From positions 186,001 to 250,000 of the IMG/VR virus record IMGVR_UViG_3300030102_006934: a stretch of 64,000 nucleotides of DNA; one strand, written 5' to 3'. Shown here in pieces: positions 25,267-40,715 of this stretch; the first letter of the stretch is position 1; every line of letters starts with the position of its first letter. The notes beneath the pieces were generated by a model that saw nothing but the letters and a program-made list of their open reading frames with translations, was not told the DNA's origin and ran no database searches. The position numbers and the translations under genes were made by a program.

Positions 25267-25331
25267 ATTTTTTGAGTTTTTATCTAATATTTATTATTAG
25301 AAAATAACATAAAAAGAAAAAACATTTTTCA

Positions 25332-28148
25332 ATGGCAGACAATAAAGTATATGTATCACCAGGTGTGTTTACATCAGAAAAAGATTTAACATTTGTAGCA
25401 CAACAAGTTGGTGTTACAACATTAGGTATAGTTGGTGAGACTGTTAAAGGTCCAGCTTTCGAACCTATTTTTATAACAAATTATGAAGAGTATACCACAA
25501 TATTCGGTGGACTAAATCCTAGAATATTTTTAAATGGTAAACCTCAGTTTGAAGCTTCTTATATAGCTAAACAGTATTTAACAGAATCTAATCAATTATT
25601 TGTAACTAGAATATTAGGTTTAACTGGTTATGATGCTGGAGCGGCTTGGGCAATTGTAGCTGATGCTGATTACGACCCTAGTACAATAGTAACTGCTTCT
25701 ACTGGTACGTTCACAGCTTCTTTCTCAGGAGCGGGAGCTACATTAGAGTTCTTTGGATTTGCTGGAGCGGGAGCTACTGAAGCCGAAAACTTAATAGACG
25801 ATAACGCTGGTATCAACGTAAATCCTTACACAGGTGTTGGTACTGATTTTTCATTACCAGGTGGTGGTGAGATATCATTCACTAAAAATGTTGGTGGTGG
25901 TTTTGATGGTTCTGCTATTGTAGGTGAGGTTACATCAGCTAACTCAACAGGACTTACTGGTACAATAAGTGGTGTAACAAGTACATTTACGGCGGACGCT
26001 TATGATTGTGAGAACAAAGTATTAGCGATGGTAAGGTCTAGAGCTGACGTTATTAGTGACATTCTTTATTGGAGAACGGACCAATCAGCAACTGGTTTAG
26101 TGGGTGACTTTAGTTTAACATCAACCGATCCTTTAGGTAATTTTACTCTATCAGCTTCTAGTTCTGGATTTACTAGTGTAGAAACTTATGAAGCTTCTTT
26201 AGATTCCACTAAAAGAAATTATTTACCTAGGGTTATTGGTCAGAATTGTTCTGATAGAGATACTAGAGTATGGGTGGAAGAAATTTACCCTAACATGTTA
26301 TCTGATTTGATTACTAACGGTAAAATTTTAGGTTTAAAATCACAATTATTACATTTTGATAGTTTTGATAATTATCAACAACAATGGCAAACACCTGAGA
26401 CTCCTTGGATTGTTTCAGAATTACGAGGTAACCAAGTAGATAAACTATTTAAGTTTATTTCTATTTCAGACGGTAGTGGAGCAAATAAAGAAATAAAAAT
26501 ATCAATACAAAGAATTAATTTAGAAGATAAGACTTTTGATGTTGTTGTTAGAGAATTCTACGATTTAGATTCTAGACCACAAATATTAGAAAGATTCTCT
26601 AGATGTTCGTTAGACCCTAACGATAATTCATTTATCGGTGAAAGAATAGGTACAGCAGATGGTGAGTATCCACTTAGAAGTAGATTTATCATGTTAGTAC
26701 TTAATCCTGACGCACCAACAGACGCTTTCCCATCAGGATTTGAGGGGTATAGAGTTAGGGATTATGTAACTAGTGATTCTTTAACTACGGCTTTAGCACC
26801 AGAATTAGAGTACAAAAGTTCTTATGACTTAACTAATGATAAATTAAGAAAAGTTTATTTAGGTATATCTAACACTGTAGGAATCGACCAAGACATGTTT
26901 GATTGGAAGGGTTATACTAATGATTCATCACCAAATCCATGGACAGCCACTACTAAAGGTTTCCATATGGACAGTGGAGCTACTGTAGCTGGTGAGTTTA
27001 TTGTTGGTTGTTGTCCATTTACTGACGCTTTAGCGATACAAGATACTGTTTATGAAAGTGTTAACGCTAGAAAATTCACATTAGTACCTTACTTAGGTTT
27101 TGATGGTTGGAATTGCCATAGAGAGTCTGGTACTACACCAAGAACAAACACTGATAGATATAGAATAGGTAAGGCTGGTTTTACAGCTGGTTTAACATCA
27201 TCTGAATTTAGTCAATTAAGTAATACTATTGGTACTTCAGATTACTACGCTTATTTAGAGGCTATACAAACTTTCCAAAATCCAGAGAGTGTTAATATAA
27301 ATGTGTTTACAACACCAGGTATAGATTATCAATCTAACTTAAGTTTAGTTGAGGAGACTATTGATATGATAGAGGAAGATAGAGCTGACTCAATCTATTT
27401 AGTTACTTCTCCAGACGGAGCTGTTCAAGAAGATTCTTCATTTGACTTAAATGGTTTAGGTTTTAACACAATAGATAAGTTATCACCAGATGCTATAGTA
27501 GACATCTTAAGTGACGCTGATTTAGATTCTAACTATACAGCCACTTACTGGCCTTGGATTCAAATGAAAGATAGTGAGAACTCTGTAAACATATTTTTAC
27601 CACCAACACTAGAAGTGGTAAAAGATATAGCACTTACGGATAATATATCTTTCCCATGGTACGCAACAGCAGGTTATACAAGAGGTAGAACTGTAGCTAT
27701 TCAACCAAGAACTAAATTAACTGAATCACAAAGAGATACACTTTATGAAGGTAGAATTAACCCAATGGCGTTCTATTCTGATGAAGGTACTTTAATTTGG
27801 GGTAACAAGAACCTACAAGTTGCTGATTCAGCATTAGATAGATTAAATATTAGAAGATTGTTACTACAAACTAGAAAATTAATTTCAGCAGTAGCGGTAA
27901 GATTGTTATTTGAACAAAACGACCAAATAGTTAGAAATCAATTCTTAAACTTAGTAAATCCAATTTTAGATAATATTAGAAGAGAAAGAGGTTTATCAGA
28001 CTTTAGAGTTCAACTTTCTAGTGACCCTGAAGAAATTGATAGAAATGAAATGAGAGGTAAGATATTCTTAAAACCAATTCCTACCTTAGAATTTATAATC
28101 TTAGAGTTTAATGTAACTCCTACTGGAGCGTCATTCGATGATATCTAA
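25332..28148 (+). CDS. Contractile tail sheath protein (gp18-like)
   Basis: VSPGVFTSEKD, KGPAFEP, YWPW, PWYATAGYTRG, RDTLYEGRINP, LNIRRLL, LLFEQND. Confidence 0.95.
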   Translation: MADNKVYVSPGVFTSEKDLTFVAQQVGVTTLGIVGETVKGPAFEPIFITNYEEYTTIFGGLNPRIFLNGKPQFEASYIAKQYLTESNQLFVTRILGLTGYDAGAAWAIVADADYDPSTIVTASTGTFTASFSGAGATLEFFGFAGAGATEAENLIDDNAGINVNPYTGVGTDFSLPGGGEISFTKNVGGGFDGSAIVGEVTSANSTGLTGTISGVTSTFTADAYDCENKVLAMVRSRADVISDILYWRTDQSATGLVGDFSLTSTDPLGNFTLSASSSGFTSVETYEASLDSTKRNYLPRVIGQNCSDRDTRVWVEEIYPNMLSDLITNGKILGLKSQLLHFDSFDNYQQQWQTPETPWIVSELRGNQVDKLFKFISISDGSGANKEIKISIQRINLEDKTFDVVVREFYDLDSRPQILERFSRCSLDPNDNSFIGERIGTADGEYPLRSRFIMLVLNPDAPTDAFPSGFEGYRVRDYVTSDSLTTALAPELEYKSSYDLTNDKLRKVYLGISNTVGIDQDMFDWKGYTNDSSPNPWTATTKGFHMDSGATVAGEFIVGCCPFTDALAIQDTVYESVNARKFTLVPYLGFDGWNCHRESGTTPRTNTDRYRIGKAGFTAGLTSSEFSQLSNTIGTSDYYAYLEAIQTFQNPESVNINVFTTPGIDYQSNLSLVEETIDMIEEDRADSIYLVTSPDGAVQEDSSFDLNGLGFNTIDKLSPDAIVDILSDADLDSNYTATYWPWIQMKDSENSVNIFLPPTLEVVKDIALTDNISFPWYATAGYTRGRTVAIQPRTKLTESQRDTLYEGRINPMAFYSDEGTLIWGNKNLQVADSALDRLNIRRLLLQTRKLISAVAVRLLFEQNDQIVRNQFLNLVNPILDNIRRERGLSDFRVQLSSDPEEIDRNEMRGKIFLKPIPTLEFIILEFNVTPTGASFDDI

Positions 28149-28195: not shown

Positions 28196-28222
28196 AACAT
28201 ATTTATATTAAAAAAGAATATT

Positions 28223-29005
28223 ATGTCAAAAATTGTAACAAAAAAACAACTAGACTTAGTTATGGAAAATACCATGAGTGAAATGAATAATGTGGTAGAG
28301 TCTAAAGAAGAAATGAAAATCACCAAAGATCAAATGGATGAACTACATAAAGAAGGTCATTGTATGTGTGGTGATAAGTGTTTAGTATACACCGAAGATA
28401 TTAAAGGTGATGATAAAAAAATGACTGAACTATTAGAAAAATTAGCTTCAGAGAAAATGGACTGTGTCGTTGTTTCTAAAGAACAAATGGATATGTTACA
28501 TAAAGATGGTAAATGTGATTGTAACAATAATGTTACCCTTTCTTACGAAGATGAGATGAAGGAAGGTGATTATATGAACGATATGAGTGACCATATGGGT
28601 GATGATATGAAGTCTGAAGGCGACCATATGGATGACCATATGACCGAAGAAATGTGTAACGAATGTGGTGGTACTATGAAAGAAGGAATTTGTGAAGGTT
28701 GTGGTAGTATGAAAGAAGGAGATGTGGATGAAAATTTTGTTTTAGCCGCTGACGAAGCTAAAGACAAGGGAGATGATGAATTTGAATATCCTAAAGGTAG
28801 TGGTAAGATGCATCCCGTAACAATTAAAGCCGATATAAAAAATGAAGAAAAAGAAGTAACTGAAATTACTGTGGGTGAAAAAAAATATAAAGTTGTGGAA
28901 GAGTCAGTAAATAAATTAACTGAAGCTTTATCTAACACAACTAATAAAGAAATTATAAAAGAAGATATGGATTTCTTTAATAAAATGGTAAATTATAAAA
29001 AATAA
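28223..29005 (+). CDS. Acidic Met/Cys-rich protein, putative scaffold or internal head protein
   Basis: Many [MLI]xE sites; duplicated QMDxLHKxGxCxC; CNECG/CEGCG; late motif upstream. Confidence 0.55.
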   Translation: MSKIVTKKQLDLVMENTMSEMNNVVESKEEMKITKDQMDELHKEGHCMCGDKCLVYTEDIKGDDKKMTELLEKLASEKMDCVVVSKEQMDMLHKDGKCDCNNNVTLSYEDEMKEGDYMNDMSDHMGDDMKSEGDHMDDHMTEEMCNECGGTMKEGICEGCGSMKEGDVDENFVLAADEAKDKGDDEFEYPKGSGKMHPVTIKADIKNEEKEVTEITVGEKKYKVVEESVNKLTEALSNTTNKEIIKEDMDFFNKMVNYKK

Positions 29006-29012
29006 TATTAAA

Positions 29013-29597
29013 ATGAAAAGAAGGTATAAAGTAACAAAAGAACAATTAGAGATGGTAGTTGAGTCTCTAGTATCTGACAATTCTTTAGTGGAAAACAAAG
29101 AAGGTGTTTTGGAAGAAGGTATTTTTGACAGACTTAGAATGAAATTTAAAGCTAAAGTAGAAGCATTTTTAGATAAATTAAGTCAATCTGACGACCCAGA
29201 AGTACAAGATGCTTTAGCTACTGTTAAAGCAACAGCTTCTAAAGTAGATGCAGAAGATGTACCTACTGAAGAAATAGAGGCCAATAATGAAGTTATGGAA
29301 GCCATTTTAAGTATGGGTAACTTAATTAACGAATCTGTAAAAGGTAAAATGAGTAAGGTGGATAGAGCTATCAATAGAGTTAAAGAGATTGGTGGATGGG
29401 GTACTGCTGGTGCAGCCTTTGTAACTGCGGTAGGTGTTTTACTTAAAGCGGCTATAGGAGCAGGTATGTATACACTTGGTTTACCAGTTGGTTTAGTGGT
29501 TATGATAATGTTAGCTATATTAGTACCTGGGGCTGTTATAGGTGGTTCAGCTACTAATAAAAGAACAAGAGATAAAACTGGTGATATTAGGTATTAA
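29013..29597 (+). CDS. Putative head-packaged protein with C-terminal hydrophobic hairpin
   Basis: Leader MKRRYKVTKEQLEMVVES; two TM-like helices. Confidence 0.55.
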   Translation: MKRRYKVTKEQLEMVVESLVSDNSLVENKEGVLEEGIFDRLRMKFKAKVEAFLDKLSQSDDPEVQDALATVKATASKVDAEDVPTEEIEANNEVMEAILSMGNLINESVKGKMSKVDRAINRVKEIGGWGTAGAAFVTAVGVLLKAAIGAGMYTLGLPVGLVVMIMLAILVPGAVIGGSATNKRTRDKTGDIRY

Positions 29598-29618
29598 TAA
29601 AAACCTTAAATATTAATT

Positions 29619-29650
29619 AAACCCTCACAGTAATGTGGGGGTTTTTATTT
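29619..29650. terminator. Terminator between convergent genes
   Basis: AAACCCTCACA-GTAA-TGTGGGGGTTT then TTATTT. Confidence 0.8.
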
Positions 29651-29911
29651 TTTAATCTCTTCTGATAATGATTTTATCATTAGTGTAATTTCACTATTTT
29701 CTTCTTTCATTTCATTTTTATTGATGAACTTATCACTAATAAAAATCCATATTAAGTAGTGCCCTACTAATTGAAATATCGGTGGGTTGTCTACTAAGTA
29801 ACCAAAAAACAAAGTTAAACTTAGGGTTAAAATAAAGAAAAATATTTCAGTATTAAAAAATCTGATTAGTTTTAGAAATAATATTTTTTTTATGATTTGG
29901 GTTTTTTTCAT
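29645..29911 (-). CDS. Small membrane protein (early/middle)
   Basis: Hydrophobic; TATATTTG upstream at 29941-29934. Confidence 0.55.
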   Translation of the reverse strand: MKKTQIIKKILFLKLIRFFNTEIFFFILTLSLTLFFGYLVDNPPIFQLVGHYLIWIFISDKFINKNEMKEENSEITLMIKSLSEEIKK

Positions 29912-29951
29912 TTTTTTCTTTAGTGTTTAATTACAAATATAATAATTATTT

Positions 29952-30320
29952 TTAATCATACAGTGGATCTATTACAAAATTTTCTATTTTATGTAAATTA
30001 TCCTTGTTTAAGACACCTTGTTCCTTGTATTTTAGAACTGAAAACCAATAATTAGATATTCCCTCCCTTCTTTTGTTAGCGTGATACCCAGAAGAAAGGA
30101 AAGAGAAAAAAGAAGCTACACCAAATAATAATGGTATTAAATAGTATAAACCAAAAAAGAAAGTGATTAAAGTACCTAAAATTTGTAGTTTAAAATGTGT
30201 TATGTTTTTTTTAACTTTCTTACTAGATAGGTTTATGTCTTCCACTAAATTAGATATATTTTTTATCATTTCTTCTTCAGTAAATCCTCTATCTTCTACT
30301 ATGTATCTTAAATCTGACAT
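29952..30320 (-). CDS. Small membrane protein (early/middle)
   Basis: Hydrophobic core; TATATTTG upstream at 30339-30332. Confidence 0.6.
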   Translation of the reverse strand: MSDLRYIVEDRGFTEEEMIKNISNLVEDINLSSKKVKKNITHFKLQILGTLITFFFGLYYLIPLLFGVASFFSFLSSGYHANKRREGISNYWFSVLKYKEQGVLNKDNLHKIENFVIDPLYD

Positions 30321-30424
30321 AATGTTTTTTACAAATATAAAAAATTATCACAAAAAAACCTAATAATAGTGATTTTTTTTTATTAAAAGCGGTGATATTT
30401 ATATAATAAATATAAATATTTTAC

Positions 30425-31285
30425 ATGAAAAAGTACATTATCACTGAACCTCAACTAAATTTAATTAAAACTAAGTTAAATGAGAGTAATCTTAGATCAT
30501 ACGTATTTGATTGGGATGATAATATACTTTACATGCCTACCACCATTAAAATGGATGTTAAAACCTCTGGTGGTTGGGAACCTATTGATGTATCTACGGA
30601 GGATTACTCTAAGGTTAGAACTGATTCTAATTATAGACTTAGGGATAACGACCCTAATATAGCTTTCAAGGATTTTAGAGATTCTAAATCATTTATCAGA
30701 GATATTAAAAAAGCTTTAAAAAATAAAATGTTCGCTCCTAGTTATGATAAATTTAAAGAAGCTCTTATTTTCGCTAATCCTTTCGGTATAAATACGGCTA
30801 GGTCACACAAACCACAAACTTTAAGGAACGGTGTTAAGTTTTTCATAGATGAAGTTTTTACTGAAGAAGAAAAAGAAGAAATGGTTAGTAATATAAATAA
30901 AAGTATGAGAAGTACTAAAAATTTAAATAGAGAACAAACTATTGATTTTTATTTAGATGAAATGGGTGAATACTATCCAGTATCATCTAAAGAATTTGGT
31001 AAAAGATTCGGTATTGATACGTCTCTCACAGCTTCTAATCCAGAACACGCTAAAAAAATAGCTATTGAACATTTCATAAAAAAGGTATTTGATAATGTAA
31101 AAACTTTGGTTAATAGTGATTATAAAAAAATGTCTTTGGGGTTTTCTGATGATGATGTTAGAAATGTTAGGTCTATGGAACTATTTATTGAAGAAGAACT
31201 TAATAAAATGTATCCAGAATTTCATTTTGTGGTTTACGATACCTCTGAGAAGGGTAAGAGAAAAATGGTAATAGAAAAAGAATGA
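30425..31285 (+). CDS. HAD-superfamily phosphatase-like protein with xxE leader
   Basis: FDWDDN (motif I), NTAR (motif II), GFSDDD..N (motif IV); leader MKKYIITEPQL..KLNES. Confidence 0.65.
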   Translation: MKKYIITEPQLNLIKTKLNESNLRSYVFDWDDNILYMPTTIKMDVKTSGGWEPIDVSTEDYSKVRTDSNYRLRDNDPNIAFKDFRDSKSFIRDIKKALKNKMFAPSYDKFKEALIFANPFGINTARSHKPQTLRNGVKFFIDEVFTEEEKEEMVSNINKSMRSTKNLNREQTIDFYLDEMGEYYPVSSKEFGKRFGIDTSLTASNPEHAKKIAIEHFIKKVFDNVKTLVNSDYKKMSLGFSDDDVRNVRSMELFIEEELNKMYPEFHFVVYDTSEKGKRKMVIEKE

Positions 31286-31803
31286 AAAATTTAATACGTA
31301 AAATATTGAAAGAAGAAACAGAAGATTTTGATTGGGTTAGTGAGGTGGACACTGAACAAGATTTTGAAGATTACTTTTATGGTAAAGGTGAATACTATCA
31401 TAATAGAAGAAATGCACCAGGTATATACATCGCGAGAGATATAAAATGGTGGAAAAATTGGATTATGAATGTGTATGGAGCTCATGCGGTAATTGAAGAA
31501 GATGTTGAGGAGTTTGCGGAGATGGTAAAAGAATTGGTTAATCCAATAGATGGGGGTAAGAAAGAATATACAATATTAGCTAATGATGTTTATGACTATG
31601 TTAGATCTCATAAAGGTAAAACTACTTTTCAAGAAAGTACTGGTGATATAAAGGATGCTTATGATTCTTTTGGTCTTTACGCTAATAATAATAATTTAAA
31701 CATCTTACAGGTAATGGATGTATTTGATAGGTGGTTAAATAAAAGAAAAAAAGAGGGGAGACCACTACATGTTGAAGATGGTCAAAGTTTTAATATAGAT
31801 TAG
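31282..31803 (+). CDS. Hypothetical protein with ILKEE..FDW leader
   Basis: MKNLIRKILKEETEDFDW; ATGA overlap with the upstream gene. Confidence 0.65.
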   Translation: MKNLIRKILKEETEDFDWVSEVDTEQDFEDYFYGKGEYYHNRRNAPGIYIARDIKWWKNWIMNVYGAHAVIEEDVEEFAEMVKELVNPIDGGKKEYTILANDVYDYVRSHKGKTTFQESTGDIKDAYDSFGLYANNNNLNILQVMDVFDRWLNKRKKEGRPLHVEDGQSFNID

Positions 31804-31814
31804 AGAACGGACTA

Positions 31815-33608
31815 ATGGGTAAAATAAATTACATATTAAAGGATTTGATACTTGAATCACGTAGAAAAGATTTAATGAATAAGTATCGTGAATTGTATGA
31901 AAAGGATTTTGATACAGTTGGTGGTATAGAGATTCGTGATGGTGATTATGATGATTTCGATTCTTTCATAAACGTACTTGAAGAGGAAATACCACACCCA
32001 AAGTATTTAGAGTTTGCTTTGAAAAATATGTGTTGTGGTGTAAAATGGGACATACCTAACTCAATACTTAATATGTTGGTTGATTTCCATGAATTATCGG
32101 AAAAAGGTTTTATTAAAAATAAAGACATATACTCTAAGGAATATAGGAATGATACTGATTTTAAATTTTTAATATCAGTAATAGAAGGAGCTAAAGAACT
32201 AGAAAGAAAAAAAGAGTTAAAAACAAAGTTAACTAGTGAGAGAGATGTTATATATGACGGTGATAGATGGGTCGTGATAGTACCTAAATCACATTTAGCC
32301 TCTTGTAAGTATGGTGCTGGAACTAAGTGGTGTACCGCCAGTAAAAACAACCCAGAACATTTCGGTGATTACACAGATGATGCATTATTGTTTTATATTT
32401 TAGATAAAAATGAAATACCAACTACACAATCTATGGGTGAGGTGGATGATAATCTCATGTATAAAATAGCTATTAATTGGAGGTATGATTTCGATAGTGA
32501 TAAAAACAAATACTTAGGTTATTCTATTTTAGATAGGAAGGAGGTAGAAATGTATGATGTTAAAGATAATAGAATAAAAATATCACATGTAATACCCTTA
32601 CTACCGAAAGATATGGTTGATTCGATGGAGGATTATTATAAACAAACCATCCAATCTAAAAACAAAGAACATTTAAAAAAGGAGTTAAGTCTTAAACTTA
32701 TATTGAATGATTTTCAACAAAAATTAGTTGACAGTGGATTAGTTAGTAAGTTTATGAGTAAATTAGAAAGGGATTTACCTAAAGAACAAGTGGTTAAACT
32801 TAATGGTGGTATTGATGATATGGAAACAGATGTTTCAACACACACATTTTACTTTACGTTAAATGATAACACTTCAATGGAAGATTCGATGGACTTGAAT
32901 AGTAAACCCATATATAGTGGTTTTGTTTTAGGTACTCAGGAATTTACTGGTAAGGAACAATTTTTAGAGTTAATGTTAATGGATGAAGAGGGTGTTACTG
33001 TAGATAGTGAAGAGTTGGTGATGGATATAACAGGGTTTAGAAATATATTTGGATATAAATTCGTAAAACCTTCAGCTTTAGATGATTCTGTTAAATGGGA
33101 AAATTGGTTAAGGTTTTTAAATTTGAAAAAAGATACATTTTTTAATACTAAACCAGAGATAATAATCAACAAGTTATATAAAAAAGTTATAGACTTTATT
33201 AGAGATAATTCTTGGATGAGACAGTGGCAAGGTGAAAATTCTAAAAAAACTTATCATACAACATCTAATGGTGAAGTTTATTGGGTGCCATCTAATTGTT
33301 CTTCAACATACGTATTTAAATATCCACTAAAAGAGGGTACAATAAGTTCTAATTTTATAGAATATATTAAAGAAAATCCAGGTTCCACATCTAAACAATT
33401 TTATTGGGACGTTTATCAAAAAGATTATTTCCCAGGTTTAAATAGTGCATTAACACCTAGTTTAAAGGCTGCTGGTATTATTAAAACTAAAAAAGGAAGA
33501 TACGGTGAATTAAAATATTATTTAGGTCCTAATTATATAAAATGGACTCAGGGTAGAGTACATAGATATAGATTACAGTGTATACCCATGAAATGGAAAA
33601 GAAGATAA
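31815..33608 (+). CDS. Protein with a PcfJ-like motif and LILE leader
   Basis: WVVIVPKSHLASCKYGAGTKWCTAS; leader MGKINYILKDLILES. Confidence 0.55.
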   Translation: MGKINYILKDLILESRRKDLMNKYRELYEKDFDTVGGIEIRDGDYDDFDSFINVLEEEIPHPKYLEFALKNMCCGVKWDIPNSILNMLVDFHELSEKGFIKNKDIYSKEYRNDTDFKFLISVIEGAKELERKKELKTKLTSERDVIYDGDRWVVIVPKSHLASCKYGAGTKWCTASKNNPEHFGDYTDDALLFYILDKNEIPTTQSMGEVDDNLMYKIAINWRYDFDSDKNKYLGYSILDRKEVEMYDVKDNRIKISHVIPLLPKDMVDSMEDYYKQTIQSKNKEHLKKELSLKLILNDFQQKLVDSGLVSKFMSKLERDLPKEQVVKLNGGIDDMETDVSTHTFYFTLNDNTSMEDSMDLNSKPIYSGFVLGTQEFTGKEQFLELMLMDEEGVTVDSEELVMDITGFRNIFGYKFVKPSALDDSVKWENWLRFLNLKKDTFFNTKPEIIINKLYKKVIDFIRDNSWMRQWQGENSKKTYHTTSNGEVYWVPSNCSSTYVFKYPLKEGTISSNFIEYIKENPGSTSKQFYWDVYQKDYFPGLNSALTPSLKAAGIIKTKKGRYGELKYYLGPNYIKWTQGRVHRYRLQCIPMKWKRR

Positions 33609-34144
33609 TGAAAAATGTAATATTAAAAATATTAAAAGAGTCTGGTGATTTTGATTGGGCTGGTGATATACCTAGTTTCTTGGAGGTTTTACAACCAGTA
33701 AGTAATAGAAATCCGAAAGATGTGTGGAGGTTACACTTTAATTTAGGTTATGGTGAAAGTTCTCATAGATGGTCTTCGGATTGGGCTCAATTTAATAATG
33801 ATGAAAAATCTACAAAAAATTTACAATGGTTAATTAATTTAATTGAGTTTCAAGAAGATGATAAAGGTACTTTTGATTCGAGTGCTTTAGCTTCAGCATT
33901 TTTGAGCGGTCAGGAATGGATTATGGGTCCATACTTGAAAGATTGGAAAGCTAAGGATTATGATAAATTGGATTCAGTTGAACAAAAAGATACAGCCGAA
34001 GAATGGATAGAGGAAATATTACAAGATTACGGTTTATGGGATTTAGATGATTATTCGGGTAGACCAGCACCAATTGAGGATTGGAAAGTAACCTATTTCG
34101 ATAAAAATGGTGTGGAACATATTGTTAAGGTAAATAATATTTAA
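33608..34144 (+). CDS. Hypothetical protein with ILKES..FDW leader
   Basis: MKNVILKILKESGDFDW; start at the TAATG overlap (33608) rather than 33578. Confidence 0.65.
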   Translation: MKNVILKILKESGDFDWAGDIPSFLEVLQPVSNRNPKDVWRLHFNLGYGESSHRWSSDWAQFNNDEKSTKNLQWLINLIEFQEDDKGTFDSSALASAFLSGQEWIMGPYLKDWKAKDYDKLDSVEQKDTAEEWIEEILQDYGLWDLDDYSGRPAPIEDWKVTYFDKNGVEHIVKVNNI

Positions 34145-34175
34145 AAAAAAGGGACTAAAAAGTCCCTTTTTTTTT
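34143..34175. terminator. Bidirectional intrinsic terminator
   Basis: AAAAAAAAGGGACT-AAAA-AGTCCCTTTTTTTTT between convergent genes. Confidence 0.9.
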
Positions 34176-34848
34176 ATCCAATAACCTCATCTATAATACC
34201 ATAGTCTAAAGCTTCTTTTGAACCTAACCACAAATCTCTTTGTGCGTCTTTTTCAACTCTTTTAGCTGTTTTACCACAGTACTTACCTAATAACTCAAAT
34301 AAAGTTTTATTAACCTTTTCCCACTCATCAAACTGTATTCTAGCGTCTTGTATGTTACCACCCGCTCCACCACTAGATTGATGTAACATAGTTCTTGAGT
34401 GTGGTAAAGAAGCTCTCATACCTTTTGTACCAGCACCTAATAATACTGAGCCCATTGAAGCGGCCATACCAGTATTAATTGTTTGTATTTTTGTTGGAAT
34501 ATAATTCATAACATCTACCATAGATAGACCAGCTTTCACACTACCACCAGGACTATCTATATGCATTGTTATAGTTTTCTTTGGATCTTGTTGTGATAAA
34601 TAAAGTAATTGTGCTTGTACTGTTATAGCCATTCTATCATCTACTGGACCAGCACACCAGATAATTCTATCCATCATTAGTCTATCAAATACAGACATTA
34701 CAGCCATATTTAATTGTCTCTCTTCTATAATAGTTGGGGTAACTGAAGCTGAAACGTTTGGTGCTACAGATTGTAACTCTTGATATGAGTTAATCATTTT
34801 TTCGTTTAAACCTAGGTGTTTTTTTGCGTACTTATTAAATTCTGACAT
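34174..34848 (-). CDS. clpP: ATP-dependent Clp protease proteolytic subunit (Bacteroidota-like)
   Basis: IDSPGGSV, AASMG (Ser), MLHQ (His), RDLW (Asp); N-terminus FNKYAKKHLG...PTIIEERQLN..VFDRLMMDRII. Confidence 0.95.
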   Translation of the reverse strand: MSEFNKYAKKHLGLNEKMINSYQELQSVAPNVSASVTPTIIEERQLNMAVMSVFDRLMMDRIIWCAGPVDDRMAITVQAQLLYLSQQDPKKTITMHIDSPGGSVKAGLSMVDVMNYIPTKIQTINTGMAASMGSVLLGAGTKGMRASLPHSRTMLHQSSGGAGGNIQDARIQFDEWEKVNKTLFELLGKYCGKTAKRVEKDAQRDLWLGSKEALDYGIIDEVIG

Positions 34849-34948
34849 GTCTTTTGAAATTTATTGTTTTTTATAACTATAGTTTAATTATTATAATAAG
34901 TCAAATTAATTTTTTATAAAAAACCTAATATTTATATAAAAAAGATTT

Positions 34949-37321
34949 ATGTCACTAAACAGGGATAACAACGCTTTATTAGATTTACTAGATAATAAGA
35001 TTGATTTAATAAAAATAGATTTAATAGAAACCATTGATGAACTAGATGGTTTGGAAAATAAGTTAATACCAGAAAGTCATTTATTATTAGAGAAGGTATC
35101 TTTATGGAGTAAGGTTAAGTACGGACTATCAAAATTAGGTAGGTATAAAGCTGGGGGTAAGATTTTAGGTAAAAGAAAAATAGACCAAGAGACCGCGGCT
35201 AAAATAGTTAGAATACTAGATAAAAAGGGTAATGAGTCTTTAAAAGAATTAGATTCTTTAATAAAACAACAAAGTTCTAAGGGTAAGGGTGATTTCCCAA
35301 ATAACCAAGACCCAGAGATATTTCTAAATATAATAGAGTCAATAGCGGCTGTTTACGATTCGATAGTGGAAGCTACTAAAAAGAATTCTGAAGAAAAAGG
35401 ATTTTTACCAATAGATGCTGCTAATTCAATTATACTAGATTTAAGAGAATATGTTAAGAAATTTTTAGATGTTGATTTATCAGCTGCCTATTCTGTTATG
35501 GATTCTGAAGAAGAAAAAGAAAGTGAATTAATAGTTGATAATACCATTGAAGAAGATAGGTCTAAGGATGTTAGGAAAAAATTACAGGCTAAAGTAGGTA
35601 AGGACGCCGAAAAAATAGATTCTCAAAGAATGAAGACTTTGAAGTCTTGGAAATTACCGTTAGCTTTATTAGGTACAGGAGCTTCTTTTGGGGCTTTAAG
35701 TTGGTTAATTCATTATCTTTTTGACCCTCAAGAAATTACTCAAATGTCACCTGAAGAAATAAGGTCGGCTAGTGAGGGTACTTTGGGGAATATTCAACCA
35801 GGTGAAGGATTTACTCAAATAATGAACAGAACAATGGATATGGATTTAGGACCAGGTTCAGACCCTAATGATGTTGTTGCTGGTTTATCTAAATTAGGTG
35901 ATGGTGATCCAAACGTGGGTATAGATATAATCACACAAAAAGGTGGTATATTTCAAGACCCAGTTGCGGCTAAAGCAACATTAAGTGAGATAGTTAGTAA
36001 CCCAAATGGTCATGGTGATAATTTAGGAGAAGTATTTAAAGGTGATTGGGCTGGTACTGGAAAAAATGCTGGTGATACTTTAGTTACTGTACCAGGTGGT
36101 ACTTTGAAGGGTATGATTGTTAAAAGTATTATTAGGTGGACAACCAAAAAAACTATTGTTGGTGGTAGTAAAATGTTAATAGCTGCACCAATACTTAAGA
36201 TATTAGGTATTGCTTTATTTGGTGGGGGTGTTGCTGTTAAATTAATGAGGGAAAAAGGTAAGAGACAATCTAGATCTAAAACCTTAGATGATTTATTACA
36301 ATCACTACAATTGGTTAAACCTACAAAAGAGAACCCACCTATCATAGATATTAAACCAGAAGATGAAGAAGACCCAGATGAAATTATAGATGACCCTAAA
36401 GGAGGTGAAGGAGATGACCCTAAAGGAGATGACCCTAAAGGAGATGACCCTAAAGGAGGCGAAGGAGATGACCCTAAAGGAGGCGAAGGAGATGACCCTA
36501 AAGGAGGTTCTGGTGGTGGAACAACAGGTGGGGGTACTGATGATCCTAGTATACCTAAAGATTTCCTAGATGGTAATAGAAACATGCAGTTAGCTTATTT
36601 ATCTAAAAACTTTTTACCTGGTGGTAAAAGTTTGTGGGATAGACTTGGATTAAAAGAGGGTACTGTTTTACCTTCTGGACTTTTTGACGCAGCTTTAGGA
36701 CAAGGTAAAGTAGACCAAGAAAAGTATTTAAAAGCCTTTTTCAATAAACTAAAAAAAGATGGTGACTTACTTAAGGACACTAGTTTTGATAAATGGAAGA
36801 AGGGTTTATTTAAGAAAGATAATTTAGCTTTAGTAGCGTGGATTAGGAATACTAGAAAAGGTATTGGTTCTTTCTTTAAAAAACTTAAGGACGCTTTCCC
36901 AGAGTTTGAAATTAGTACTAGAGCTAAAGCAGGTATCTCAAAACCTGGTCAAAGAGGTAAGGGAGCTGGAACAGCGGGTAGTATAAACAATTCAACAGAT
37001 ATTAGATATGATTTAATAATAGAAGCAGGTTTAGGTAGTACGGCTAATCAAGCTGGTTTTGACGAGTCTACTTTTATGAAAAATTTACCACAATTTATGA
37101 AAATGTTAGCTTCAATGTACTTTGGAGCTAAAGGTAGTAAGTTATACTATAATGAAAAGGCTGTATTAGATAAGTGTAAGAAATATGGTTGTAAAGCAAC
37201 ATCTTCAAAAGAGTTCGATAAAAGTGTTTCCGATGATTACTATTTAATAGATGATCAAAAAATGAAACAAGAAAAGACTTTAAACGAAGAAATAATGAGA
37301 ATAAGACAATTAATGAAATAA
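34949..37321 (+). CDS. Large putative head-packaged/ejected protein with two TM segments and DDPKG repeats
   Basis: Late motif upstream; LLLE/LIIE/LNEE sites; C-terminal LNEEIMRIRQLMK. Confidence 0.55.
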   Translation: MSLNRDNNALLDLLDNKIDLIKIDLIETIDELDGLENKLIPESHLLLEKVSLWSKVKYGLSKLGRYKAGGKILGKRKIDQETAAKIVRILDKKGNESLKELDSLIKQQSSKGKGDFPNNQDPEIFLNIIESIAAVYDSIVEATKKNSEEKGFLPIDAANSIILDLREYVKKFLDVDLSAAYSVMDSEEEKESELIVDNTIEEDRSKDVRKKLQAKVGKDAEKIDSQRMKTLKSWKLPLALLGTGASFGALSWLIHYLFDPQEITQMSPEEIRSASEGTLGNIQPGEGFTQIMNRTMDMDLGPGSDPNDVVAGLSKLGDGDPNVGIDIITQKGGIFQDPVAAKATLSEIVSNPNGHGDNLGEVFKGDWAGTGKNAGDTLVTVPGGTLKGMIVKSIIRWTTKKTIVGGSKMLIAAPILKILGIALFGGGVAVKLMREKGKRQSRSKTLDDLLQSLQLVKPTKENPPIIDIKPEDEEDPDEIIDDPKGGEGDDPKGDDPKGDDPKGGEGDDPKGGEGDDPKGGSGGGTTGGGTDDPSIPKDFLDGNRNMQLAYLSKNFLPGGKSLWDRLGLKEGTVLPSGLFDAALGQGKVDQEKYLKAFFNKLKKDGDLLKDTSFDKWKKGLFKKDNLALVAWIRNTRKGIGSFFKKLKDAFPEFEISTRAKAGISKPGQRGKGAGTAGSINNSTDIRYDLIIEAGLGSTANQAGFDESTFMKNLPQFMKMLASMYFGAKGSKLYYNEKAVLDKCKKYGCKATSSKEFDKSVSDDYYLIDDQKMKQEKTLNEEIMRIRQLMK
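36389..36507 (+). repeat. Six copies of GATGACCCTAAAGGAG (15/24-nt units; DDPKG or DDPKGGEG)
   Basis: Read directly from the sequence. Confidence 0.95.
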
Positions 37322-37377
37322 AACAAAATTGTCGCATATTTATAATAAAAGATAATAAAAAAGTAAAAACATAAACA

Positions 37378-37866
37378 ATGGCAGATTTATTGATGAGAAT
37401 GCCTGTTCCTTACGAACCAAAGAAAAAGAACAGGTTTATATTTAGATTCCCTACACCTCTTGGAATTCAAGAGTGGTTTGTAGCTTCTGGTTCTAGACCA
37501 GCAATTACTATAGAAGAGGTGCCTATTCAATTCTTAAACACCGAAACATACGTAGCGGGTAGATTTAATTGGGAGAGTATTGATGTAACATTTCGTGACC
37601 CTATTGGTCCTTCAGCGGCTCAGGCTCTTATGGAATGGGTTCGTTTACACGCGGAATCGGTAACAGGTCGTATGGGTTATGCAGCGGGTTATAAGAAAGA
37701 TATTGAGTTAGAATTATTAGACCCTACAGGTGTTGTCATTGAAAAATGGATACTACAAGGAACTATGTTAACAAACGTTAACTTTAACGATTTAGATTAT
37801 GGTTCATCTGATATTGCTGACATCAACGCTACTTTAAGATTTGATAGAGCTATACACGTATTCTAA
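37378..37866 (+). CDS. Tail tube protein (gp19-like)
   Basis: YEPKKKNRF, YVAGRFNW, YKKDIELELLDPTGVVIEKWILQG, LDY. Confidence 0.92.
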   Translation: MADLLMRMPVPYEPKKKNRFIFRFPTPLGIQEWFVASGSRPAITIEEVPIQFLNTETYVAGRFNWESIDVTFRDPIGPSAAQALMEWVRLHAESVTGRMGYAAGYKKDIELELLDPTGVVIEKWILQGTMLTNVNFNDLDYGSSDIADINATLRFDRAIHVF

Positions 37867-37882
37867 TAAAAAAATTAATTAT

Positions 37883-37911
37883 AAAAACCCTCTTTACTGG
37901 AGGGTTTTTTT
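37883..37911. terminator. Bidirectional terminator
   Basis: AAAAACCCTC-N7-GAGGGTTTTTTT. Confidence 0.85.
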
Positions 37912-38676
37912 ATGCTTTGAATCGAACCAAAAAGTTCTACCATTTCTATCTTTAATTTTTTCCTTTTTAGTATAACACCTCATCCATTCTCTAAATGTTA
38001 ATTTATCATCAAAGTATGGATTCATCCATTGTGATAGTTGTCCACCTCCTAGTTGGTAAGCTTCTTCAACCACAGTATCACACAAAGATAACATTTTTTT
38101 ATTTTTAATAGCTTCTCTAGAGGATACAAATGGGTCTTGGTCAGCTCTATCTAAAATCTCAGCTCTAAGGTAGTTACCCATTCCGTTGAAGTATTTTTGA
38201 TCTAACATTAATTCGTAAATTGGTTTGTCGAATATTTTTTTATGAGAATTATTATGTAAGTTGTCTACAAAATCATCCCATTCAGTTAACATACAAGGAC
38301 CTCTATTATCAGACCATCCATTACTTTCCTTCCATCTAGAAAATCTTCTAACATCATACATACATAATTTACCACCACTTAATGATTCAAAAATTATATG
38401 TGAGTGTTTAGGTACATTACCCTTCTCAATAAAAACCCAATTACCAGACATACCCATACCCATTAAAAACCTTTTCTCTTTTTTAGTTTTTACATCTTCA
38501 ATGACCAACATTAACTCTTTACCTCTACTAAAAGAATAAATTTTAAACTCTTTATAAGGTACACTTATATTTGGGTTTTTATTCTTTTCAGATTTTTTAA
38601 CGTCAACATAAGTTTCGTCTTTACTAACATAATTAATGTATTCAGACATAATTTTGACTTCTGCTAATTCAGGCAT
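37894..38676 (-). CDS. nei: Fpg/Nei DNA glycosylase, NEIL1-like (zincless finger)
   Basis: MPELAEV (Pro2-Glu3), RGKEL, GMSG, DVRRF, H2TH LDQKYFNGMGNYLRAEIL, DRNGRTFWF; no Cys4 zinc finger. Confidence 0.9.
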   Translation of the reverse strand: MPELAEVKIMSEYINYVSKDETYVDVKKSEKNKNPNISVPYKEFKIYSFSRGKELMLVIEDVKTKKEKRFLMGMGMSGNWVFIEKGNVPKHSHIIFESLSGGKLCMYDVRRFSRWKESNGWSDNRGPCMLTEWDDFVDNLHNNSHKKIFDKPIYELMLDQKYFNGMGNYLRAEILDRADQDPFVSSREAIKNKKMLSLCDTVVEEAYQLGGGQLSQWMNPYFDDKLTFREWMRCYTKKEKIKDRNGRTFWFDSKHKKTLQ

Positions 38677-39941: not shown

Positions 39942-40715
39942 ATGGACGTACAAAATCAAACAATAGAAAACAAAAGTGTACAAGTAGAAGTACCTTATGA
40001 TATAATACCGTTACCTTCAAAAGGTTTATTATATCCAGGTAGAAAACCTAATTTAGAGGTTGAATACTTAACCGCTATGGATGAAAACATTCTAACATCT
40101 CCTAATCTTTTACAGTCAGGTAAATTTATAGAGGTTTTAATGAAAAGAAAAATAAGAAAAGGCCAAGTATCTCACGATGATTTGTTACTCGGTGACAGGA
40201 ATTCTATCTTAATATGGTTAAGAGCTACTGGTTATGGTGAAAAATATCCAGTAACAATACAAACACCAGAAGGACTAGAAATAGAAACAGAGGTAGATTT
40301 AACAAAATTGAAACAAAAAGAATTAGGAGCAGAACCAGACGATAATGGATTATTCGATTTTACCTTACCCCAATCTAAGAAAAGAATTAAATTTAGGTTA
40401 TTAACGGTAAAAGATGAAGATGAATTAACAAAAAGAGAAAAAGCTCAAGAAAAAAGAAAGGCTGAATTTTCAGACAGCTTAACACACAAGTTAGGTACAC
40501 ATATCATGAGTATTGATGGTCGTAATGATAAAGAATGGATACATAATTTTGTTAGAGTTATGCCGGCTAGAGATTCATTAGCTTTAAGAAGATATATAAA
40601 TGATATCGAACCAGGTGTCGATTTATCTATCACAGTGGAGGGTCCTGGAGGTGACCCTATAGACACATTTCTTGTCCTTGGACCAGACTTTCTTTGGCCT
40701 GAGTTCGGAGTATAA
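39942..40715 (+). CDS. Baseplate hub assembly / tail assembly chaperone (gp26-like)
   Basis: IPLPSKGLLY, LTAMDENIL, LLLGDR, LRATGYG, FTLP, FRLLT, FLWP terminus. Confidence 0.8.
   Translation: MDVQNQTIENKSVQVEVPYDIIPLPSKGLLYPGRKPNLEVEYLTAMDENILTSPNLLQSGKFIEVLMKRKIRKGQVSHDDLLLGDRNSILIWLRATGYGEKYPVTIQTPEGLEIETEVDLTKLKQKELGAEPDDNGLFDFTLPQSKKRIKFRLLTVKDEDELTKREKAQEKRKAEFSDSLTHKLGTHIMSIDGRNDKEWIHNFVRVMPARDSLALRRYINDIEPGVDLSITVEGPGGDPIDTFLVLGPDFLWPEFGV

What the first reader, a model, noticed from the sequence alone, without database searches (positions are those of the whole stretch)
28223..37321. Block of unrelated late proteins sharing short leader/tail tags ending in [ILMV]-x-E: putative capsid-targeting and protease-release system
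Seen: two leader classes on non-homologous bodies. Class 1: MSKIVTKKQLDLVMEN, MKRRYKVTKEQLEMVVES, MKKYIITEPQLNLIKTKLNES. Class 2: MKNLIRKILKEETEDFDW, MKNVILKILKESGDFDW, MGKINYILKDLILES. C-terminal tags IIKEDMDFFNKMV and LNEEIMRIRQLMK also occur. The block separates sheath from tube by ~9 kb. Known: T4 internal proteins carry an N-terminal capsid-targeting sequence removed by prohead protease gp21 at [IL]-x-E. Inference: a modular tag loads diverse cargo (HAD phosphatase, PcfJ-like and membrane proteins) into the head for co-injection.
Basis: partly seen in the sequence, partly recalled or inferred. Interest (0 to 1): 0.75.

Follow-up and report, generated by a model that had tools for sequence, protein, structure and literature searches.

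The report
Shared peptide tags on jumbo-phage proteins
About a tenth of the proteins of this uncultured 380-kb T4-like phage carry a conserved short peptide tag that contains the motif a T4-type head protease cuts, sometimes repeated many times along one protein, so it most likely marks proteins for cutting and loading into the phage head, though no experiment has shown this.

Summary
The strong signal is one composite tag, h-[N/K]-E-[S/E]-x-D-F-D-W-[V/I]-[K/R]-D-[V/I]-x-P. It is not special to the sheath-tube block.

- Genome-wide: about 50 copies in 24 proteins of the 380-kb genome, two thirds of them internal, up to about 10 per protein at roughly 110-aa spacing.
- Metagenome-wide: at least 335 protein clusters, up to 13 copies per protein.
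- In the block, o173 and o178 are robust members. o597 is not. Class 1 (o260, o194, o286) is weak.

Selection acts on the peptide: synonymous codons vary, and the tag is the most conserved segment among orthologues. The tag is not part of the cargo fold in two AlphaFold models, and the bodies it precedes are mostly unrelated.

The genome encodes a T4 gp21-type prohead protease. Its capsid protein has L-I-S-E|T exactly where T4 gp23 is cut. Small ORFs in the head module carry the same leaders. Tagged genes share a promoter-like box with virion genes.

Best reading (confidence about 0.45): a cut-and-address tag for a T4-like head protease, a polyprotein-capable variant of the T4 capsid-targeting system. 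Cleavage and packaging are untested. A phage ClpC/ClpP pair is a rival reader of the tag.

The parts
25332..28148 (+). Tail sheath gene, left border of the block
   Evidence: Pfam Phage_sheath_1/1C and phrog_23, E=5e-50. An ATATTTAT box lies at 25287-25294.
28199..28206 (+). ATATTTAT promoter-like box upstream of o260
   Evidence: The same box precedes TerL, portal, protease, scaffold, sheath and tube.
   Evidence: Present and conserved in close relatives. Not recovered by the outside-only class 1 profile (E>100). A related motif repeats inside o260 at residues 33 and 84.
28952..29002 (+). o260 C-terminal tail IIKEDMDFFNKMVNYKK
   Evidence: Present and conserved in L013 and L017. Kinship with the other helices was judged by eye only.
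29013..29066 (+). o194 N-terminal leader MKRRYKVTKEQLEMVVES. The body has C-terminal hydrophobic segments (residues 130-182).
   Evidence: Not recovered by the outside-only profile.
30395..30402 (+). ATATTTAT box upstream of o286
30425..30487 (+). o286 class 1 leader MKKYIITEPQLNLIKTKLNES. The body is HAD-like (a lead only).
   Evidence: The leader is kept in orthologues at 49-66% identity as MKKIIITESQ...LNEE. Leave-out E=2.6; the orthologue's domain E=0.004. HAD lead from the Atlas, score 0.90.
31282..31350 (+). o173 composite tag MKNLIRKILKE|ETEDFDWVSEVD (class 2)
   Evidence: Leave-out E=1.5e-12. Nearly invariant in 16 orthologues that are 49-84% identical overall. pLDDT<50 and detached in the AlphaFold model.
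31815..31859 (+). o597 N-terminus MGKINYILKDLILES, not a demonstrable tag member
   Evidence: No hit to the class 2 profile. Conserved in orthologues. Resembles T4 gp24 MAKINELLRE|S by eye only.
33608..33676 (+). o178 composite tag MKNVILKILKE|SGDFDWAGDIPS (class 2)
   Evidence: Leave-out E=1.4e-7. I5, K7, I8, L9, E11, D16 and W17 are invariant in 12 homologues down to 36% identity. Residues 1-19 have pLDDT<50 while the body reaches 84-94.
34174..34848 (-). ClpP protease subunit inside the block
   Evidence: Pfam CLP_protease E=2.9e-60. Conserved at this position in relatives.
34928..34935 (+). ATATTTAT box upstream of o790
34949..37321 (+). o790: large protein with a hydrophobic segment (about residues 403-433), a GDDPKG repeat, and the C-terminal tail LNE|EIMRIRQLMK (37280-37318)
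   Evidence: The tail EE[IV]x[RK]I..LM is kept in orthologues at 43-50% identity. This helix type occurs 5 times against 0.8 expected.
37378..37866 (+). Tail tube gene, right border of the block
   Evidence: phrog_4542 E=1e-28 and Pfam gp19. ATATTTAT box at 37336-37343.

Best explanation
The tags are a bipartite 'cut and address' peptide read by the phage's T4 gp21-type prohead protease and prohead core.

The first half is a hydrophobic-x-Glu site. At N-termini it is the end of an 11-residue amphipathic helix, M-K-N-L-I-R-K-I-L-K-E. Internally it is h-N-E-S. This is where the protease would cut after Glu, as T4 gp21 does at L/I-x-E. The second half is x-DFDW-[V/I]-[K/R]-D-[V/I]-x-P. It would stay on the new N-terminus and serve as an exosite or docking element.

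Proteins with one tag would lose a short leader. Proteins with many tags would be diced into mostly acidic modules of about 110 aa. The products would be head-internal, or transient core, proteins.

Shown: the motif, its conservation at the protein level, its independence from the cargo fold, the presence of the protease and its conserved site in the capsid protein, and a promoter-like motif shared with virion genes.

Inferred: cleavage, packaging and any injection into the host.
For: 1. A gp21-family protease is present with its catalytic blocks.
2. The capsid protein's LISE|T aligns to T4 gp23 FLTE|A and gp24 LLRE|S. The protease's C-terminal FMES aligns to T4 gp21 ITES.
3. h-x-E sits at a fixed offset before the Trp in 36 of 38 internal and 15 of 17 N-terminal copies here, and in 515 of 553 tags in 150 independent library proteins, mostly INES or LNES.
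4. The literature says gp21 cuts after L/I-x-E, that the 10-19-residue N-terminal propeptides are capsid-targeting sequences, that Alt is also cut at its C-terminus, and that core proteins are cut many times (PMC9026906). SPN3US gp245 prefers Ser at P1' (PMC10052503).
5. Small ORFs between the protease, scaffold and capsid genes carry the same leaders, and the scaffold-like protein has ALLES near its N-terminus and INES near its C-terminus.
6. The tag is the most conserved segment in orthologues, synonymous codons vary freely, and it is detached and low-confidence in two unrelated folds.
7. The same module occurs stand-alone behind an N-terminal tag and as a C-terminal module behind an internal tag. 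One library orthologue lacks exactly one module between two tags.
8. Tagged ORFs are enriched behind the ATATTTAT box shared with virion genes (22/50 vs 67/405, p=3e-5). That box is absent upstream of the primase and helicase homologues.
Against: - There is no proteomic or biochemical evidence. The phage is uncultured and no isolate carries the tag proteins.
- h-x-E is a short motif in a Glu-, Ile- and Leu-rich proteome, so on its own it is weak.
- The best-conserved part (DFDW) lies after the putative cut, unlike the T4 CTS.
- The modules are acidic, unlike the basic T4 internal proteins.
- About 10% of ORFs would be head cargo, which is a lot.
- One tagged protein carries a lysozyme domain, which is not a typical head cargo.
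- The phage also encodes ClpP and a ClpC-like unfoldase.
- The complex prediction gave no verdict.
- The late-promoter assignment rests on few reference genes.
Confidence: 0.45

Rival explanations
1. Uncleaved docking peptide. The helix plus DFDW is a short linear motif that tethers each module to a common hub, either a virion part or an intracellular factory or host factor. In this reading h-x-E is simply part of the binding epitope or a helix cap, and the protease plays no role.
For: The tag is detached from the cargo fold yet is the most conserved segment. DFDW would be retained under any model. It occurs once per module.
Against: This does not explain why the invariant Glu with a hydrophobic residue two positions before it matches the specificity of the protease family encoded in the same genome. 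Nor does it explain why head-module ORFs carry leaders without DFDW.
Confidence: 0.23
2. Conserved first strand or linker of a fast-diverging family of ~110-aa domains. The tag would be a structural domain boundary in tandem arrays, such as fibre or decoration proteins.
For: Module length peaks sharply at 92-130 aa. Some module subfamilies exist, including one ending in GxWVxV.
Against: 32 of 58 bodies have no detectable paralogue even with iterated profiles. Only the tags align across 39 two-module stretches. A body-only search finds just 3 homologues. The tag heads an all-alpha fold, an alpha/beta fold, a 392-aa lysozyme-containing module and a 945-aa module. It is not packed onto the fold in either model.
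Confidence: 0.12
3. Recognition signal for the phage's own ClpC-ClpP protease, acting as a degron or adaptor signal and giving timed turnover of late proteins.
For: ClpP lies inside the block and is conserved there across the clade. A ClpC-like unfoldase with a GVGFG loop is encoded at about 134-137 kb. From my own knowledge, some ClpX N-terminal degrons are Met-basic-hydrophobic.
Against: Degrons act at termini, whereas two thirds of the copies are internal and repeat up to 13 times. Processive Clp degradation needs no repeated sites. There is no evident reason to put a constitutive degron on 10% of the proteome.
Confidence: 0.07
4. A nucleic-acid-level feature: an A-rich translation enhancer at gene starts, or a recombination or regulatory DNA repeat.
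For: The leaders are encoded by very AT-rich, purine-rich codons at gene starts. Cassette-like module gain and loss occurs at tags.
Against: Synonymous codons at conserved residues follow genome-wide usage (GAT:GAC 22:8; mixed Val and Arg codons). All 30 exact DF[DE]W copies are in frame in ORFs. Internal copies cannot be start-codon enhancers.
Confidence: 0.03

Closest known systems
T4 capsid-targeting sequence (CTS) of internal proteins IPI-III and Alt, with gp21 processing at L/I-x-E
   Same: A gp21-family protease is encoded. Short N-terminal amphipathic leaders (Glu at residue 11-21, against 10-19 residues in T4) end in hydrophobic-x-Glu. The leader is shared by unrelated, fast-changing cargo bodies. 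A C-terminal tail preceded by LNE (o790) parallels Alt's C-terminal processing. Capsid and scaffold proteins have sites in the expected places.
   Different: There is a conserved DFDW box downstream of the cut. Most copies are internal, giving polyprotein-like arrays of up to 10 modules here and 13 elsewhere. Modules are acidic, not basic. About 10% of ORFs are tagged. No significant sequence similarity to the T4 CTS itself was shown.
phiKZ / 201phi2-1 / SPN3US head-protein maturation (gp175/gp245, S/A-x-E)
   Same: Jumbo phages with dozens of head proteins. Cleavage is after Glu, with several cuts per protein, Ser preferred at P1', and paralogous internal or ejection protein families.
   Different: P3 here is hydrophobic (I/L/V/M), not Ser/Ala/Gly. 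The head genes are T4-type (gp23 and gp21 Pfam families). No DFDW-like retained box is described for those phages.
Hypervariable internal-protein loci of T-even phages
   Same: Variable cargo sits behind a constant leader, and the content of the sheath-tube block differs between relatives while the flanks stay fixed.
   Different: Here the cassettes are spread over at least six genomic regions and can be fused in frame into arrays.

Membership tests
T4-type CTS / gp21 propeptide system | A gp21-family (Peptidase_S77) prohead protease is encoded | tested here: met
   PF03420 E=4.5e-29 at genome 151810-152367. The ELNHP and GxSSRGxGS blocks align with T4 gp21.
T4-type CTS / gp21 propeptide system | Hydrophobic-x-Glu site at the tag boundary | tested here: met
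   51 of 55 copies here and 515 of 553 in library proteins. The capsid-protein site aligns to the T4 gp23 and gp24 sites.
T4-type CTS / gp21 propeptide system | Signal is a short N-terminal leader (10-19 residues) | tested here: inconclusive
   True for 17 N-terminal copies and for the class 1 leaders. However, 38 of 55 copies are internal.
T4-type CTS / gp21 propeptide system | Targeting information lies in the removed propeptide | tested here: not met
   The most conserved box (DFDW...) lies on the C-terminal side of the Glu, so it would be retained. Whether it is what does the targeting is unknown.
T4-type CTS / gp21 propeptide system | Cleavage after Glu and incorporation into proheads | not testable with these tools
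   No proteomics are available for this uncultured phage. Complex prediction gave no verdict.
phiKZ-type head maturation | S/A/G at P3 of the cleavage motif | tested here: not met
   P3 is I, L, V or M in the great majority of tags.
Single repeated structural domain | Bodies following the tag are homologous, and the tag is part of the fold | tested here: not met
   32 of 58 bodies are singletons. Only the tags align. The tag has pLDDT<50 and is detached in two different folds.
DNA-level repeat or regulatory element | Conservation extends to synonymous positions | tested here: not met
   Codon usage at conserved residues matches the genome average.
Clp degron | A cognate unfoldase and ClpP are present | tested here: met
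   ClpP. ClpC-like AAA+ protein with a GVGFG loop.
Clp degron | Signal acts at an exposed terminus | tested here: not met
   Two thirds of the copies are internal and repeated.

The most novel reading that the evidence does not exclude
A clade of uncultured jumbo T4-like phages uses a universal junction, h-N-E|S-x-DFDW-V-R-D-V-x-P, as a plug-in code. Any domain placed behind it, alone or strung into arrays of up to 13 unrelated ~110-aa modules, is diced by the prohead protease and retained in the capsid through the DFDW N-terminus. New virion cargo would then evolve by cassette insertion, fusion and fission at the tags, and about 10% of the proteome would be routed this way.
Probability: 0.3. 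Interest if true: 0.8.

Novelty: new variant of a known kind. Interest (0 to 1): 0.62.

Why it matters
If the tag works as proposed, it generalises the T4 capsid-targeting principle from a handful of internal proteins to a proteome-scale, polyprotein-capable system in an uncultured clade of very large phages. It would mark out dozens of candidate virion-delivered proteins per genome, which are likely anti-defence or takeover factors, purely from sequence. It would also give a compact natural tag for loading foreign proteins into large capsids. Even if cleavage is wrong, a ~25-residue peptide that is more conserved than any of the 50 or more domains it precedes, and that is found in at least 335 protein clusters, is an undescribed short linear motif whose reader has yet to be found.

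Tried and rejected
- Complex prediction of the gp21-like protease with o173 residues 1-45 gave no verdict (score 0.00, controls not run). It is not evidence either way.
- The T4 late promoter TATAAATA is not found upstream of the tagged genes and precedes only one of the structural genes checked, TerL. ATATTTAT turned out to be the relevant box.
- Pfam and PHROGs found nothing for the multi-tag proteins, apart from one lysozyme domain, a weak nucleotidyltransferase hit and one PHROG of unknown function.
- Iterated profile searches that included the tags seemed to unite most modules. This was rejected as tag-anchored, because only the tags align and a body-only search finds 3 homologues.
- Fold searches with the o178 model gave no credible match.
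- The PDB sequence search for o597 found nothing.
- No paper mentions DFDW together with phage.
- No isolate phage carries a multi-tag protein or an o173 homologue.
- BLASTP of T4 early and late proteins found only 8 homologues, so the early-versus-late promoter comparison is thin.
- The class 1 profile including the block members looked significant, but this was circular. The leave-out test downgraded it.
- The N-glycosylation sequon idea for N-E-S was rejected because K, T and R replace N freely.
Full report
**What is in the window.** The window is bases 186001-250000 of a single 380,343-bp, 31% GC viral contig. The finding spans the 9.2 kb between a tail sheath gene (25332-28148) and a tail tube gene (37378-37866), both confirmed by Pfam and PHROGs. 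The block holds seven plus-strand ORFs, which I call o260, o194, o286, o173, o597, o178 and o790 after their lengths. It also holds two small minus-strand membrane ORFs and a minus-strand ClpP gene (34174-34848, CLP_protease E=2.9e-60). After removing the first 25 residues, the seven bodies show no pairwise similarity better than E about 1.

**The tag is a genome-wide feature, not a block feature.** A regex scan of my own set of 455 ORFs found the 'class 2' element all over the genome. DF[DE]W occurs 30 times against 0.75 expected from composition, and every copy is in frame inside a called ORF, none in the other five frames. A relaxed core occurs 55 times against 8 +/- 2.5 in shuffled proteins.

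Anchoring on the Trp shows one composite motif: h-[N/K]-E-[S/E]-x-D-F-D-W-[V/I]-[K/R]-D-[V/I]-x-P. A hydrophobic-x-Glu sits at a fixed offset in 36 of 38 internal and 15 of 17 N-terminal copies. N-terminal copies are preceded by an amphipathic helix, M-K-N-L-I-R-K-I-L-K-E. Internal copies mostly read I/L-N-E-S.

Twenty-four proteins carry 50 such tags. One 1254-aa ORF (genome 109811-113575) has about ten, and a 1577-aa ORF has seven. The stretches between tags peak at 92-130 aa and are mostly acidic. Counting all leader types, about 47 of 455 ORFs (10%) are tagged, and roughly six of them are in the block.

**The tag is clade-wide.** o173 has metagenomic orthologues at 49-84% identity in which the tag is nearly invariant and is the best-conserved segment. 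The same holds for o178 down to 36% identity. Eighteen IMG/VR loci hold either orthologues or other small proteins that share only the tag. The order sheath, variable block, ClpP, (o790), tube is conserved while the block's content changes.

A profile of 32 tags searched against 1.84 billion representative proteins found 335 proteins at E<=0.001. Many have several copies, up to 13. In the best 150 of these, 515 of 553 tags have h-x-E at the fixed offset, INES and LNES dominate, and spacing peaks at 100-130 aa. No isolate phage in INPHARED has such a protein, and no paper pairs DFDW with phage.

**What kind of object is it?** Three tests bear on this.
- *Protein-level, not DNA-level.* Synonymous codons at the conserved residues follow genome-wide usage (first Asp GAT:GAC 22:8 against 75:25; Val and Arg codons mixed).
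- *Not the start of one repeated domain.* With tags stripped, 32 of 58 module bodies have no detectable paralogue even with jackhmmer. In an alignment of 39 two-module stretches only the two tag blocks align. A body-only query finds three homologues.
- *Not part of the cargo fold.* AlphaFold models of o173 (all-alpha, mean pLDDT 65) and o178 (alpha/beta, mean pLDDT 78.5, body 84-94) both leave the tag (residues 1-20 and 1-19) as a helix plus coil with pLDDT below 50.

Modules do move as cassettes. One domain occurs stand-alone behind an N-terminal tag (genome 100503-100946) and, at 45% identity, as the C-terminal module behind an internal tag (369117-370403). A library orthologue of the 1254-aa protein lacks exactly one module between two tags.

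**Link to head maturation.** The genome has a T4-type head module at 145-161 kb, containing TerL, portal, a Peptidase_S77 (gp21-family) protease (E=4.5e-29), an acidic scaffold-like protein and a gp23-family capsid protein.
- MAFFT aligns the capsid protein's SSLISE|TTDAGN onto T4 gp23 SFLTE|AEIGG and gp24 ELLRE|STTT. It aligns the protease's C-terminal FMES onto T4 gp21 ITES. The ELNHP and GxSSRGxGS blocks are kept.
- The literature states that gp21 cuts after Glu in L/I-x-E, that the 10-19-residue N-terminal propeptides of the internal proteins are the capsid-targeting sequences, that Alt is also processed at its C-terminus, that core proteins are cut into several fragments, and that CTS-like leaders on divergent cargo occur in T4 relatives (PMC9026906; PMC3012670). 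SPN3US gp245 prefers Ser at P1' (PMC10052503).
- Small ORFs lying between the protease, scaffold and capsid genes start with the same leaders: MKMKKRIVKLNESDLELLVKKIIREEE, MNIRKIIKEELL, MRSLIKKVLRE, MKKVIKINESQLEYLVKKVIKEEE and MRNLIRKILKEES. The scaffold-like protein has ALLES near its N-terminus and INES 21 residues from its C-terminus.
- The o790 tail (LNE-EIMRIRQLMK) belongs to a helix type that occurs 5 times against 0.8 expected and always follows h-N-E-x. The scaffold's C-terminal ELEKMKKLW looks similar. This last link is by eye.

**Expression class.** ATATTTAT occurs 123 times on the main coding strand and 58 times on the other. Of the 123, 86 touch the 6.6% of the genome that is intergenic. 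The box lies 4-40 nt upstream of TerL, portal, protease, scaffold, sheath and tube, and upstream of o260, o286 and o790. The two detectable replication homologues (primase, helicase) lack it. Tagged ORFs sit directly behind it four times more often than others (22/50 against 67/405, Fisher p=3e-5). 'Late' is therefore plausible but rests on few reference genes.

- Class 2: o173 (E=1.5e-12) and o178 (E=1.4e-7) are recovered. o597 is not.
- Class 1: the family is strictly N-terminal and real outside the block. o286 is borderline (E=2.6), and its Ser-variant orthologue has a domain E of 0.004. o260 and o194 are not recovered. They share VTKxQLxxVxE[NS] with each other, and a related motif recurs inside o260.
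- Functional labels: the HAD label for o286 is a lead (Atlas score 0.90; FDWDDN motif). PcfJ-like for o597 is weak (0.76).

**Best explanation and rivals.** The reading that accounts for most of the facts is a bipartite cut-and-address tag. The gp21-type protease would cut after the Glu, and the DFDW box would stay on the new N-terminus as an exosite or docking element. Single-tag proteins would lose an 11-21-residue leader. Multi-tag proteins would be diced into modules. I put this at about 0.45.

Points against it: the conserved box lies after the cut, the modules are acidic, 10% of ORFs is a lot of cargo, one tagged protein carries a lysozyme domain, and nothing has been measured.

Rivals:
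- An uncleaved docking motif (0.23).
- A structural boundary of a diverging domain family (0.12), weakened.
- A signal for the phage's own ClpC-ClpP (0.07). ClpP is in the block, and a ClpC-like unfoldase with a GVGFG loop lies at about 134-137 kb. Internal repeated copies do not fit a degron.
- A nucleic-acid-level feature (0.03), contradicted.

**Verdict.** It is a new variant of a known kind. The decisive experiments are protease assays, prohead-loading assays, and metaproteomic searches for N-termini that begin after the tag Glu.

Noticed in passing
window 34174-34848 (-) and genome about 134.36-136.67 kb (L037:1204-3519, -): The phage encodes a bona fide ClpP and a ClpC-like double-AAA+ unfoldase (UVR-like YEDAANLRDEE motif, GVGFG loop), so a complete Clp protease is likely. 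ClpP is conserved between sheath and tube across the clade.
   Followed up: partly
window 25287-25294, 28199-28206, 30395-30402, 34928-34935, 37336-37343, and genome-wide: ATATTTAT[A/T] box, strand-biased (123 vs 58) and concentrated in intergenic DNA 4-40 nt upstream of virion genes and tagged genes. It is a candidate late promoter, and its core TATTTATA is the reverse complement of T4's TATAAATA.
   Followed up: partly
window 37894-38676 (-): Fpg/Nei-family DNA glycosylase (Fapy_DNA_glyco, H2TH and Neil1 DNA-binding domains) right after the tube gene.
   Followed up: partly
window 39942-40715 (+): Protein matching the Pfam T4_baseplate family (E=5e-7).
   Followed up: no
window 28223-29005 (o260) and genome 66846-68312: o260 has internal repeats [IV][TS]K[DE]QM[DE]xL[HK]K[DE]GxCxC and a Cys-rich, Met/Asp/Glu-rich body. 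A paralogue with the same repeat lies at 66.8 kb, next to two ORFs sharing a ...EDxxKMKHLMNFKSQDTLGT motif.
   Followed up: no
genome 71859, 72614, 158962, 159791, 160255 (L011:13962-16241): A third N-terminal leader type, MRR[F/Q/Y]DK..I.[E/K]AN.RLE, on five ORFs. Three of them are consecutive, just after the capsid gene.
   Followed up: no
window 36388-36508 (in o790) and L011:2459-4342 (portal C-terminus): Tandem Gly/Asp-rich repeats: GDDPKG(GE) in o790 (TRF period 15/24/39) and GGGFGDDT repeats in the portal's C-terminal tail.
   Followed up: no
window 31815-33608 (o597), L011:12685-13452 (-), L018, L019: o597 shares a GTKWC-containing N-terminal domain with a 255-aa ORF beside the capsid gene and with ORFs in related contigs. 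PcfJ-like is only a weak lead.
   Followed up: partly
genome 113578-114792 (L005:578-1792), and L032:3271-4866: A tagged protein with a C-terminal phage lysozyme domain sits next to multi-tag genes. A lysozyme-domain gene also neighbours the 13-tag protein P0026 in another contig.
   Followed up: no
A3 alignment; genome 359237-363970, residues 1485-1577: A module subfamily ends in ...Y[I/V]xxGxWVx[V/I] immediately before the next tag or the stop codon.
   Followed up: no
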